Below, one piece after another: positions 1,650 to 8,678 of a stretch of DNA of 35,438 bases (its first letter is position 1; the number at the start of each line of letters is the position of its first letter). The notes below the pieces were generated by a model. The model made no database searches. It was not told the DNA's origin and saw only the letters and a program-made list of their open reading frames with translations. The stretch is from contig NW_021831736.1 of NCBI RefSeq assembly GCF_006345805.1, positions 1-35,438 on the forward strand, in the 5' to 3' direction. The stretch comes from Octopus sinensis (taxonomy: Eukaryota). The position numbers and the translations under genes are program-made.

Positions 1650-3190
1650 TATATGTATGTATGTATGTGTGTATGTATGTATGTGTGTATGTATGTATGT
1701 ATGTATGTATGTATGTATGTATGTATGTATGTATGTATGCGTGTGTGTATGTATGTGTGTATGTATGTATGTGTATGTATGTATGTATGTATGTATGTGT
1801 GTGTGTATGTATGTATGTATGTATGTATGTATGTATGTATGTATGTATGTGTGTATGTATGTATGTATGTATGTATGTTTGCATGTATGTATCAAGGTAT
1901 ATATGTATGTATGTACCTATGTATGTATATATGCATGTATGTACATATGTATACATTTCTTCATGTATGTACGTGTGTGTATGTTTGTATGTTTGTACGA
2001 GTGTATGTATTTATGTATGCATTCATTTATACATATATTAGTGAATATGTTTGTATGTCTATACATGTGTTCGTATGCATGTATGTATGTATGTATGTAT
2101 GTATGTATGTATGTACGTACGTACGTATGTATGTATGTATGTATATGTGTATGCATTTATGCATGTATGTGCGTGTATATTTGTATGTATGTACATATGT
2201 ATGACTGCATGCGTGTGTGTATGAATCTAAGTATGAATGTATGTACGCATGTATAAATATGTCTGTATGTATAAATATGTCTCTATATATGAATGCATGT
2301 ATGTAAGTATGTATGTATGTGTGTGTATGCATGCAAGTGCGTATGAATGTCTGCATAATGTATGTATGAATGTATGTATGAGTATATGTATTGTATGTAT
2401 GTGTGTATGTATGCATGCATATATATATATATATTATATATATATATATACACACACACATATATACATGTATGTATGTATGTATGTATGTATGTATATG
2501 TATGTATGTATTGTATGTATGCGTGTGTGTATGTATGTGTGTATGTATGTATGTATGTATGTATGTATGTATGGTGTGTGTATGTATGTATGTAGTATGT
2601 ATGTATGTATGTATGTATGTATGTATGTTGTATGTATGTATGTATGGATGTATGTTTGCATGTATGTATCAAGGTATATATGTATGTATGTACCTATGTA
2701 TGTATATATGCATGTATGTACATATGTATACATTTCTTATGTATGTACGTGTGTGTATGTTGTATGTTTGTACGAGTGTATGTATTTATGTATGCATTCA
2801 TTTATACATATATTAGTGTATATGTTTGTATGTCTATACATGTGTTCGTATGCATGTATGTATGTATGTATGTATGTATGTATGTATGTATGTATGTACG
2901 TATGTATGTATGTATGTATATGTGTATGCATTTATGCATGTATGTGCGTGTATATTTGTATGTATGTACATATGTATGACTGCATGCGTGTGTGTATGAA
3001 TCTAAGTATGAATGTATGTACGCATGTATAAATATGTCTGTATGTATAAATATGTCTCTATATATGAATGCATGTATGTAAGTATGTATGTATGTGTGTG
3101 TATGCATGCAAGTGCGTATGAATGTCTGCATAATGTATGTATGAATGTATGTATGAGTATATGTATTGTATGTATGTGTGTATGTATGCA

Positions 3191-3254
<64 letters not shown>

Positions 3255-8332: not shown

Positions 8333-8399
<67 letters not shown>

Positions 8400-8400
<1 letters not shown>

Positions 8401-8596
8401 CGGAGATGTACTCGCATAGCAAGTAATTTGATCTGAGATCGTGTGCTGAAACGAAAACAATTGCAGCGTGGAAGGTGTTTATAAGCCATTTAAGAAACAC
8501 ACAAAAGCCGTTCGATTCACTTCAACATTTAAGTTTAATTTGTCAAAATATTTTCGTCGCTAAAATCCGCGACCTGTTCACCGACAAAGTCCGTGC

Positions 8597-8600
<4 letters not shown>
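8400..8600 (-). mobile_element. ~200-bp HHR-bearing cassette flanked by (TA)n on both sides (solo PLE pLTR or retrozyme-like unit)
   Basis: Unique sequence bounded by TA tracts, with an HHR fold at its 5' end on the - strand. Confidence 0.6.
8539..8588 (-). ncRNA. Minimal type I hammerhead ribozyme, G3-C8 variant with an extra G after A9
   Basis: - strand: UUUGUCG | GUGAACA | G | GUCGC-GGAUUUUA-GCGAC | GAAA-AUAU-UU | UGACAAA. Stem I 7 bp, stem II 5 bp, palindromic AAUAUU stem III. Confidence 0.75.
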
Positions 8601-8639
<39 letters not shown>

Positions 8640-8678
8640 GAAAGAAGGTTTGAAAATGCTATTTTAAAAGATGTTTAT

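What the first reader, a model, noticed from the sequence alone, without database searches (positions are those of the whole stretch)
8539..8588. Hammerhead ribozyme with a natural G3-C8 swap and an extra G in the catalytic core
Seen: a complete type I scaffold (7-bp stem I, perfect 5-bp stem II, GAAA, palindromic stem III) whose core reads GUGAACA rather than CUGANGA. Established: positions 3 and 8 form a tertiary Watson-Crick pair in the active fold, engineered G3-C8 double mutants recover activity, and an extra nucleotide between A9 and G10.1 is tolerated in the CChMVd (+) hammerhead. Inference: a functional variant that CUGANGA-based searches would miss, possibly fixed in a high-copy octopus element. 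Whether it has already been described needs checking.
Basis: partly seen in the sequence, partly recalled or inferred. Interest (0 to 1): 0.88.

Follow-up and report, generated by a model that had tools for sequence, protein, structure and literature searches.

The report
Penelope-element hammerhead with swapped core pair
The motif is the hammerhead ribozyme of a high-copy octopus Penelope-like retrotransposon, and its core base pair is naturally G3-C8 instead of the usual C3-G8, a variant that standard hammerhead searches miss and whose cleavage has not yet been tested.

Summary
On the minus strand, 8588..8539 reads UUUGUCG GUGAACA G GUCGC-GGAUUUUA-GCGAC GAA AAUAUU U|UGACAAA.

It is not an isolated oddity. 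Window 8398-8599 is a 5'-truncated copy of a Penelope-like retroelement (PLE) inserted in a (TA)n microsatellite, and the motif lies on the element's sense strand about 140 nt from its 3' end. That is where PLE hammerheads are known to sit.

G3, C8 and the extra G are the family consensus: 1,310 of 1,494 genomic copies are exact, and none is a compensated C3-G8 revertant.

Related PLEs (24-57% protein identity) carry a hammerhead at the same place with the same layout. Most read CUGANGA plus one extra nucleotide, some read U3-A8, and three further families read GUGAACA as in octopus. Stems I and II covary, and the 3-8 pair is always Watson-Crick (about 12 C-G, 6 U-A, 4 G-C).

The "extra G" is the published hallmark of PLE minimal hammerheads, not a novelty. 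The palindromic stem III marks the dimer-dependent type.

Cleavage is untested. An engineered C3G/G8C double mutant of a lizard PLE hammerhead is published as partly active.

Verdict: a real hammerhead homologue and a new natural core variant of a known kind, of moderate interest.

The parts
8339..8397 (.). (TA)n microsatellite on the 3' side of the insertion (element sense); it is the target or duplicated target
   Evidence: Most copies are flanked by (TA)n on both sides. Copies in other contexts show AT-rich target duplications of about 10-16 bp.
8398..8455 (-). 3' 'tail' of the PLE copy, about 57 nt, absent from the inverted partner arm in head-to-head copies
   Evidence: inverted arms end at CAATTG and lack this segment. 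PLE tails present at one end only are described in PMC8557442, and PMC11167929 explains them by two internal reverse-transcription start sites.
8456..8538 (-). PLE 3'-terminal region between the hammerhead and the tail
   Evidence: Conserved at about 96-100% in all copies.
8539..8588 (-). Hammerhead motif, type I, PLE minimal/dimeric kind. Stem I 8588-8582/8545-8539; core GUGAACA 8581-8575 (G3 = 8581, C8 = 8576); unpaired G 8574; stem II 8573-8569/8560-8556; GAAA 8555-8552; palindrome AAUAUU 8552-8547; U17 8546; predicted cleavage 8546|8545
   Evidence: Homologous motifs in related PLEs. Covariation.
8589..8599 (-). Last 11 nt before the 5' truncation point of this copy; longer copies continue into the 3' UTR and ORF, or into an inverted arm
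8600..8638 (.). (TA)n microsatellite on the 5' side of the truncated insertion

Best explanation
Window 8398-8599 is a 5'-truncated copy of a young, abundant octopus Penelope-like retroelement. The element encodes a reverse transcriptase followed by a C-terminal GIY-YIG endonuclease, and its sense strand is the window's minus strand. This copy was inserted by target-primed reverse transcription into a (TA)n microsatellite.

The 50-nt motif is that element's hammerhead. It is of the minimal, type I, dimer-dependent kind typical of PLEs. Stems I and II form within one RNA. Stem III is only the palindrome AAUAUU, so two copies (in a tandem transcript or in trans) must pair to build the active junction. 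An unpaired nucleotide sits between A9 and G10.1.

The particular feature is that the tertiary Watson-Crick pair of the core is G3-C8 instead of C3-G8. This state is the consensus of the octopus family and recurs in at least three related PLE families whose stems differ but still pair.

Shown here: the anatomy, the copy number, the PLE context and orientation, the homologous motifs in related elements, and covariation including the 3-8 pair.

Inferred: that the RNA self-cleaves after U17 (8546|8545). Cleavage is probably weak and dependent on a dimer or on the element's protein, as reported for other PLE hammerheads. It would trim transcripts that run through tandem or nested copies.

The window copy itself is a dead fragment with no promoter of its own.
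For: Family and consensus
- At least 40 copies at about 100% identity, from 701 first-look candidates.
- 1,494 exact hits of a pattern anchored on stems I and II, against 0 for the reversed control.
- 1,310 of these have the exact core GUGAACA+G.
- 16 copies vary at position 3 and 44 at position 8. All are single changes, and none is a C3-G8 revertant.

PLE context
- Variable AT-rich target duplications of about 10-16 bp, 5' truncation, head-to-head inverted copies and a one-sided tail.
- Longer copies (about 2-3 kb held in the fetched loci) carry, on the same strand as the motif, an ORF with YVDD, CX3CxxC and GIY...YIG motifs.
- Pfam GIY-YIG matches at E = 4.4e-4, just under the curated cut-off.
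- 135 homologues were found, one named 'GIY-YIG domain-containing'.
- A profile of the family hits reverse transcriptases in the PDB at E = 3.3e-4.
- All these traits, and (TA)n targeting, are described for PLEs in PMC8557442.

Homologous hammerheads just 3' of the ORF, sense strand, in relatives
- L071: UUCUCA CUGAAGA G GCCGCC..GGCGGU GAA AAUU U|UGAGGA. L072, L074, L075 and L076 are similar.
- U3-A8 forms: L078, L081, L082, L084, L092, L118.
- G3-C8 forms: L073 (UACCA GUGAACA G GUCACA GUAG UGUGAC GAA AGACU U|UGGUG), L077 and L083.
- P0001 (octopus) and P0002 (L073) are sister proteins with SH-aLRT support 98.

Covariation over 12 families
- 97.7% of cells are paired, against 65% in shuffles (0 of 500 shuffles reach the observed value) and 32-43% when partners are slid.
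- 9 of 11 pairs change on both sides.
- The 3-8 pair is C-G in 5, G-C in 4 and U-A in 3, and never unpaired.
- A relaxed scan that leaves positions 3 and 8 free gave 24 hits in 281 kb, all Watson-Crick at 3-8.

Literature
- PLE minimal hammerheads have a conserved nucleotide between 9 and 10.1, G10.1-C11.1 and a palindromic 15.2-16.2. A natural U3-A8 covariant is known (PMC4209133).
- In a lizard PLE hammerhead, C3G and G8C each abolish cleavage, and the double mutant partly restores it (PMC11167929).
Against: - No cleavage data exist for this RNA.
- PLE minimal hammerheads cleave poorly in vitro (PMC4209133). The engineered G3-C8 form is only partly active, and hammerhead mutants do not impair PLE insertion in vitro (PMC11167929). 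Catalysis may therefore be weak or dispensable.
- 25 octopus copies carry G3 with G8, an unpaired state. This may be a small subfamily that spread with a broken pair.
- The minimum-free-energy fold extends stem I with a G3.U17 wobble, which would compete with the G3-C8 pair.
- Stem I is a plain helix with no obvious partner for loop II.
- In head-to-head copies, a read-through transcript would lock the motif into a roughly 145-bp hairpin.
- The nearest-neighbour energy of the double hammerhead (-27.2 kcal/mol) is no better than that of two monomers (-29.4).
- Stem pairing in the covariation table is partly built in. Eight motifs were found with a descriptor that requires stems, and I registered four by eye.
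- Rfam models give no hit.
Confidence: 0.78

Rival explanations
1. The fold is conserved but not as a catalyst. It would be a hammerhead-derived structure kept in the PLE 3' region for another role, such as recognition by the element's RT/EN or placement of the reverse-transcription start, with cleavage lost or irrelevant.
For: - Hammerhead catalytic mutants do not affect PLE insertion in vitro, no RNA-seq ends were seen at the cleavage site of the lizard element, and that ribozyme needs the protein to cleave (PMC11167929).
- Whole PLE clades thrive without hammerheads (PMC8557442).
- 25 copies with unpaired G3/G8 exist.
Against: - A role in protein binding alone would not obviously require positions 3 and 8 to stay Watson-Crick through three different pair types.
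- It also would not explain why U4, G5, A6, G12, A13 and A14 are kept in nearly all families. Among 22 families, L085 has G at position 4 and L084 has C at position 9.
- The engineered G3-C8 PLE hammerhead does cleave (PMC11167929).
Confidence: 0.18
2. A chance look-alike: an AT-rich repeat that happens to contain UGA..A and GAAA between two short helices.
For: No Rfam hammerhead hit even at E<=10. Two core positions differ from the textbook consensus.
Against: - 0 hits in 20 Mb of simulated sequence.
- The descriptor finds only this family and canonical PLE hammerheads in real octopus DNA.
- The motif lies on the sense strand at the site where related PLEs carry a hammerhead.
- Rfam also misses those canonical relatives.
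Confidence: 0.02
3. A foldback/MITE-like DNA palindrome or a tRNA-derived SINE, in which the apparent hammerhead is a by-product of a long inverted repeat.
For: About 15% of loci in the first 100 pattern hits are near-perfect palindromes of about 300 bp. There are weak resemblances to polymerase III A and B boxes in the arm (my reading).
Against: - The palindromes are the head-to-head 5'-truncated pairs typical of PLE insertions (PMC8557442).
- The same 200-bp module is the 3' end of copies 2-3 kb long that encode RT and GIY-YIG.
- Target duplications are long and variable, not TA or fixed-length.
- T4 runs inside the arm would stop polymerase III.
Confidence: 0.02

Closest known systems
Minimal type I hammerheads of Penelope-like elements (Cervera & De la Pena 2014, PMC4209133; Lunse, Weinberg & Breaker 2017, not readable here)
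   Same: - Location in the PLE terminal repeat/3' region on the sense strand
- Open stem I
- Unpaired nucleotide between A9 and G10.1
- G10.1-C11.1 pair
- Very short, palindromic stem III, implying action as a dimer
- Thousands of dispersed, mostly truncated copies
   Different: The core reads GUGAACA, not CUGANGA. The 3-8 pair is G-C.
U3-A8 covariant hammerheads of Schistosoma Cercyon PLEs (PMC4209133)
   Same: A natural change of both partners of the 3-8 tertiary pair in a PLE hammerhead. U3-A8 also occurs in relatives of the octopus element (L078, L081, L082, L084, L092, L118).
   Different: U-A can be reached from C-G by two transitions through a U.G wobble. G-C needs two transversions through an unpaired state.
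Engineered C3G/G8C double mutants (Martick & Scott 2006, as cited in PMC11167929; Anolis PAc PLE hammerhead, PMC11167929)
   Same: The same two core substitutions. They show that a G3-C8 core can cleave, and that each single change is inactivating.
   Different: Those are laboratory constructs with partial activity. Here the state is natural, is the consensus of more than 1,300 copies, and is shared by several PLE lineages.
CChMVd (+) hammerhead with an extra A between A9 and G10.1 (De la Pena & Flores 2001, cited in PMC4209133)
   Same: An extra unpaired nucleotide at the same place in the core.
   Different: That is a viroid type III hammerhead. In PLE hammerheads the extra nucleotide is the rule rather than an exception.
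Canonical-core PLE hammerheads in the same octopus genome (L031, L034-L037)
   Same: Same architecture, and a place about 190 nt from a 3' end that abuts (TA)n in L036/L037.
   Different: A different PLE lineage, with CUGAAGA, no extra nucleotide, and scores over the Rfam RF00163 cut-off.

Membership tests
Hammerhead ribozyme (type I, PLE minimal kind) | Three-way junction: stem I and stem II around the core, stem III or a palindrome that can form it in a dimer | tested here: met
   Stems I (7 bp) and II (5 bp) are the minimum-free-energy fold. AAUAUU is self-complementary.
Hammerhead ribozyme (type I, PLE minimal kind) | Invariant core nucleotides U4 G5 A6 A9 and G12 A13 A14 | tested here: met
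   Read directly at 8580-8578, 8575 and 8555-8553.
Hammerhead ribozyme (type I, PLE minimal kind) | C at position 3 and G at position 8 (textbook CUGANGA) | tested here: not met
   G3 (8581) and C8 (8576), in the window and in the family consensus.
Hammerhead ribozyme (type I, PLE minimal kind) | Positions 3 and 8 able to form a Watson-Crick pair | tested here: met
   G-C here. Across related families the pair is C-G, U-A or G-C and never unpaired.
Hammerhead ribozyme (type I, PLE minimal kind) | A15.1-U16.1 pair and a non-G nucleotide at position 17 | tested here: met
   A 8552, U 8547, U17 8546.
Hammerhead ribozyme (type I, PLE minimal kind) | G10.1-C11.1 closing stem II | tested here: met
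   G 8573 pairs with C 8556.
Hammerhead ribozyme (type I, PLE minimal kind) | PLE hallmarks: one unpaired nucleotide between 9 and 10.1, and a palindromic 15.2-16.2 (PMC4209133) | tested here: met
   G 8574 and AUAU 8551-8548. Every relative in which I registered the motif has one extra nucleotide at this place: G in L071-L076, L083-L086, L091, L093, L094, L097 and L099; A in L077, L078, L081 and L082; U in L092 and L118; C in L090.
Hammerhead ribozyme (type I, PLE minimal kind) | Match to curated covariance models (Rfam RF00163 and relatives) | tested here: not met
   No hit at the gathering score or at E<=10. The models also miss the canonical-core relatives at E<=5, so the test is uninformative for this subclass.
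Hammerhead ribozyme (type I, PLE minimal kind) | Site-specific self-cleavage after position 17 | not testable with these tools
   Needs transcription and cleavage assays or RNA end mapping.
Penelope-like retroelement (EN+, C-terminal GIY-YIG) | Single ORF with a reverse transcriptase followed by a GIY-YIG endonuclease and a Cys-rich linker | tested here: met
   - The 433-aa ORF in L070 has YVDD, CQSNCAVC and VYQIKC...SYIGETSRS.
- GIY-YIG Pfam E = 4.4e-4, under the cut-off.
- The family profile hits PDB reverse transcriptases at E = 3.3e-4.
- Pfam RVT models do not hit.
Penelope-like retroelement (EN+, C-terminal GIY-YIG) | Insertion signature: 5' truncation, variable target duplications, inverted head-to-head copies, a one-sided tail, microsatellite targets | tested here: met
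   as described in PMC8557442 and PMC11167929.
Penelope-like retroelement (EN+, C-terminal GIY-YIG) | Assignment to a named clade (Neptune, Nematis, Hydra, Penelope/Poseidon) | tested here: inconclusive
   Short ORFs in relatives (547-740 aa), (TA)n targeting and a sea-cucumber homologue recall Hydra. The linker is of CX3-5CxxC type, as in Neptune/Nematis. No reference PLE sequences were available for a tree.

The most novel reading that the evidence does not exclude
G3-C8 hammerheads are an active, selected natural class carried by a subclade of Penelope-like elements in octopus and in other, unidentified marine animals. Censuses based on CUGANGA or on Rfam miss them entirely. Their origin required passage through an unpaired 3-8 intermediate, which was tolerated because PLE mobility does not strictly need cleavage.
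Probability: 0.5. Interest if true: 0.6.

Novelty: new variant of a known kind. Interest (0 to 1): 0.5.

Why it matters
The C3-G8 tertiary pair is the feature that reconciled hammerhead structure with biochemistry. Natural covariation at it has so far been reported, in what I could read, only as U3-A8.

A G3-C8 core that is the consensus of more than 1,300 copies and recurs in several retroelement lineages would be natural genetic evidence for that pair in its most demanding form, two transversions.

It would also show that hammerhead counts in animal genomes are underestimates, because descriptors fix CUGANGA. It offers a ready-made natural system (G-C, C-G and U-A versions of one ribozyme in related elements) for asking what the identity of this pair does to rate, folding and protein dependence.

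It also bears on the open question of what hammerheads do for Penelope-like elements.

Tried and rejected
- Rfam at the gathering score and at E<=10 gave only TA-repeat artefacts (miRNA-like hits) and no hammerhead. I then found that Rfam also misses the canonical relatives.
- I first read the locus as a foldback/MITE palindrome, then as a SINE with A- and B-box-like words. Both were dropped once longer copies showed an RT/GIY-YIG ORF on the motif's strand.
- Unmasked BLAST of the loci was swamped by microsatellites and was repeated with masking.
- I looked for a C3-G8 or otherwise compensated subfamily inside the octopus family and found none.
The upstream repeat, the promoter and the G3/G8 copies could therefore not be examined.
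- Pfam does not recognise the RT of this family.
- Cofolding of two copies does not favour the double hammerhead over alternatives, so it is uninformative.
- Lunse et al. 2017 is not held in the library. Full-text searches for a natural G3-C8 hammerhead found only engineered ones.
- Relatives L079/L080, L087 and L088 showed no recognisable hammerhead in the flank available.

Full report
**1. The observation.** On the minus strand, 8588..8539 reads UUUGUCG GUGAACA G GUCGC GGAUUUUA GCGAC GAA AAUAUU U UGACAAA. The predicted cleavage site lies between 8546 and 8545. Stems I and II are the minimum-free-energy fold of the 50-mer (-13.9 kcal/mol, z = -2.9) and of the 204-nt sense RNA of the whole repeat copy. 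Rfam gives no hammerhead hit at the gathering score or at E<=10; the weak hits there are artefacts of the flanking TA repeats.

**2. A high-copy family whose consensus has G3, C8 and the extra G.** The genome is 2.7 Gb. The 201 bases 8399-8599 recur at about 100% identity in at least 40 places, from 701 first-look candidates. A pattern anchored on stem I and stem II, with the core left free, has 1,494 exact hits against 0 for the reversed control. Of these, 1,310 carry exactly GUGAACA+G. Sixteen copies differ at position 3 and all keep C8. Forty-four differ at position 8 and keep G3. No copy is a compensated C3-G8 or U3-A8 revertant. The window copy differs from the consensus only at 8582, which turns the innermost stem I pair from A-U into G.U.

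**3. What the repeat is.**
- Copies are flanked by (TA)n. Where the target is not a microsatellite, they are flanked by AT-rich target duplications of about 10-16 bp and variable length (L003, L042, L047, L054, L055, L056). This points to reverse transcription at the target.
- Many copies are near-perfect palindromes: the 145-bp arm, a short variable centre and an inverted arm. The 57 bases 8398-8455 are present at one end only.
- Other copies run on past the centre into an element of which about 2-3 kb is held in the fetched loci.
- On the strand that carries the motif, that element has an ORF with YVDD, a CX3CxxC linker and VYQIKC...SYIGETSRS. This is a reverse transcriptase followed by a GIY-YIG endonuclease.
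- Supporting scores: Pfam GIY-YIG at E = 4.4e-4, just under its cut-off; a homologue named "GIY-YIG domain-containing protein"; and a family profile that hits reverse transcriptases in the PDB at E = 3.3e-4.
- RT plus a C-terminal GIY-YIG nuclease, 5' truncation, head-to-head inverted copies, a one-sided tail and (TA)n targets are the published signature of Penelope-like elements (PMC8557442). The tail is explained by two internal reverse-transcription start sites (PMC11167929).

The window therefore holds a 5'-truncated, 200-bp PLE copy in a TA microsatellite. The motif lies on the sense strand, about 140 nt from the 3' end.

**4. What is known about hammerheads in such elements.**
- PLEs carry hammerheads in their terminal repeats.
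- The metazoan ones are minimal type I motifs that seem to work as dimers. [quoted passage not shown]
- A natural U3-A8 covariant exists in Schistosoma, and in vitro activity is low (PMC4209133).
- The motif here has every hallmark, so the extra G is ordinary for this class.
- In the Anolis PLE hammerhead, C3G and G8C each abolish cleavage and the double mutant partly restores it. Cleavage needs the element's protein, and it is not needed for insertion in vitro (PMC11167929).
- The same octopus genome also holds canonical PLE hammerheads that pass the Rfam cut-off. In L036/L037 these lie about 190 nt from a 3' end abutting (TA)n.

**5. The comparative test.** The ORF has 135 homologues at 33-57% identity in the protein search, mostly on marine metagenome contigs of 2-3 kb. 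I fetched DNA for 13 of them and 36 further loci (24-54% identity) from a metagenome scan.
- Canonical cores sit just 3' of the ORF on its strand. L071 reads UUCUCA CUGAAGA G GCCGCC GAAG GGCGGU GAA AAUU U|UGAGGA. L074 and L075 read the same with GUUGCC/GGCAAC and GCUGCC/GGCAGC. L072 reads GUCG CUGAAGA G GCCUCA GGGG UGAGGC GAA AGCU C|CGGC. L076, L090, L091, L093, L094 and L097/L099 are also canonical.
- U3-A8 cores occur in L078, L081, L082, L084, L092 and L118.
- G3-C8 cores occur in three further families. L073 reads UACCA GUGAACA G GUCACA GUAG UGUGAC GAA AGACU U|UGGUG and ends in (TA)n. L077 reads UCCA GUGAACA A GUGCCA GUAG UGGCUU GAA AGCU U|UGGA. L083 reads UUUCC GUGAACA G GCUUC AUAAA GAAAC GAA AAUUU U|GGAAA.
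- The protein of L073 is the sister of the octopus protein (SH-aLRT support 98). The other two lie in a different clade. The node joining them is unresolved, so I cannot count the origins.

**6. Covariation.** I used a trimmed, equal-length alignment of 12 families.
- 97.7% of cells pair, against 65% in shuffles (0 of 500 reach the observed value) and 32-43% when partners are slid.
- 9 of 11 pairs change on both sides.
- The 3-8 pair is C-G in 5, G-C in 4 and U-A in 3, and never unpaired.
- One caution: eight motifs were found with a descriptor that demands stems, and I registered four by eye, so the stem figures are partly built in.
- Positions 3 and 8 were left free. Even so, all 24 hits of a relaxed scan over 281 kb are Watson-Crick there. 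Three of these hits look spurious (L072 minus, L076 minus, L075 position 1422).
- With L084-L086 read by eye, the census is about 12 C-G, 6 U-A and 4 G-C families.

**7. Chance.** The descriptor gives 0 hits in 20 Mb simulated from the window's trinucleotide statistics. It finds only this site in the window. In 477 kb of octopus loci it finds only copies of this family and canonical PLE hammerheads. Rfam models fail on the canonical relatives too, with no hammerhead hit at E<=5 in 51 kb. This shows why the whole subclass, and not only the G3-C8 form, escapes standard annotation.

**8. How it most likely works.**
- Shown: a hammerhead homologue, in the sense strand of a PLE 3' region, with a maintained G3-C8 pair.
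- Inferred: in transcripts that contain two copies (partial tandems, nested insertions) or between two RNAs, the AAUAUU palindromes pair to form stem III. The G3-C8 pair then forms in place of C3-G8, and the RNA cleaves after U17. Cleavage is probably slow and helped by the element's protein.
- All four G3-C8 families have U, not C, at position 17. This fits the remark that an engineered G3-C8 variant does worse with C17 (PMC3884650), but four cases prove little.

**9. Evidence against strong activity.**
- The G3.U17 wobble appears in the minimum-free-energy fold.
- Stem I is plain, with no evident partner for loop II.
- The double hammerhead gains no energy over two monomers.
- In head-to-head copies the motif's complement is transcribed first and would sequester it.
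- 25 copies have G3 with G8.
- The window copy itself is a dead fragment.

**10. Novelty.** PLE hammerheads, the extra nucleotide, dimer dependence, U3-A8 covariation and the engineered G3-C8 rescue are all published. I found no report of a natural G3-C8 hammerhead in the open full-text library. However, Lunse et al. 2017 could not be read and supplementary lists were not checked. I file this as a new variant of a known kind. The probability that it is a true hammerhead homologue under selection for the 3-8 pair is high. The probability that it cleaves measurably is about 0.55-0.65.

Noticed in passing
G000 genome-wide; one example in L056 about 1560-1600: Among copies that differ at core position 8, C-to-G dominates (25 G, 13 U, 6 A), giving an unpaired G3/G8. 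In L056 the G8 arm starts 8 nt from the inverted junction and otherwise matches its partner arm at 123 of 125 positions. This may be a small subfamily or a recurrent junction-associated change.
   Followed up: partly
L031, L034-L037 (G000 C13:29988995, C5:30250304, C4:156829443, C16:25146363/25146794): A second PLE lineage in the same genome has a canonical CUGAAGA hammerhead without the extra nucleotide and scores over the Rfam cut-off. In L036/L037 it lies about 190 nt from a 3' end that abuts (TA)n.
   Followed up: partly
G000 C1:71455794/71455878 and C1:123918744/123918845: Two hammerhead copies lie on the same strand only 84-101 nt apart. Such direct tandems could supply the dimer partner.
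   Followed up: no
L077 1945-1975, L078 2820-2860, L082 3165-3190, L083 2450-2530, L084 2400-2470, L086 3070-3110, L087 1725-1800: Repeated TGACGTCA palindromes (CRE-like) lie between the ORF stop and the hammerhead in several related PLEs. They may be part of the internal promoter of the terminal repeat.
   Followed up: no
L071-L076: Rfam hammerhead models give no hit at E<=5 even for the canonical-core minimal hammerheads of these PLEs, so this whole subclass goes unannotated by Rfam scans.
   Followed up: yes
L086 about 3160-3210: This hammerhead has a canonical CUGAAGA G core, but the sequence after stem II reads GAAUAGCUAUC, so position 15.1 would be U with a palindrome UAGCUA. It may be a flipped 15.1-16.1 pair.
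   Followed up: no
L068 290-1000 and L070 equivalent: In the octopus family, about 1 kb of 3' UTR between the ORF stop and the hammerhead is filled with (GTAT)n/(GT)n-like arrays. In relatives the hammerhead follows the stop codon within 0-110 nt.
   Followed up: no
L068 1506-1508: This copy has an in-frame TAG inside the GIY-YIG domain (VYQIKC*EGAC) where L070 reads CAG (Q). It is an ordinary decayed copy, not a recoding signal.
   Followed up: yes
L028 1250-1290 and 1905-1925: This insertion and its TA/CA-rich flanks sit between inverted repeats GACGTTAAACGATGATGAT... and ...ATCATCATCGTTTAACGTC, as if the PLE landed in the microsatellite core of another inverted-repeat element.
   Followed up: no
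window 8380-8422 and 8587-8646: Weak Rfam matches to mir-297, mir-1277, mir-466 and others are produced by the (TA)n hairpins and are far below the gathering scores.
   Followed up: yes
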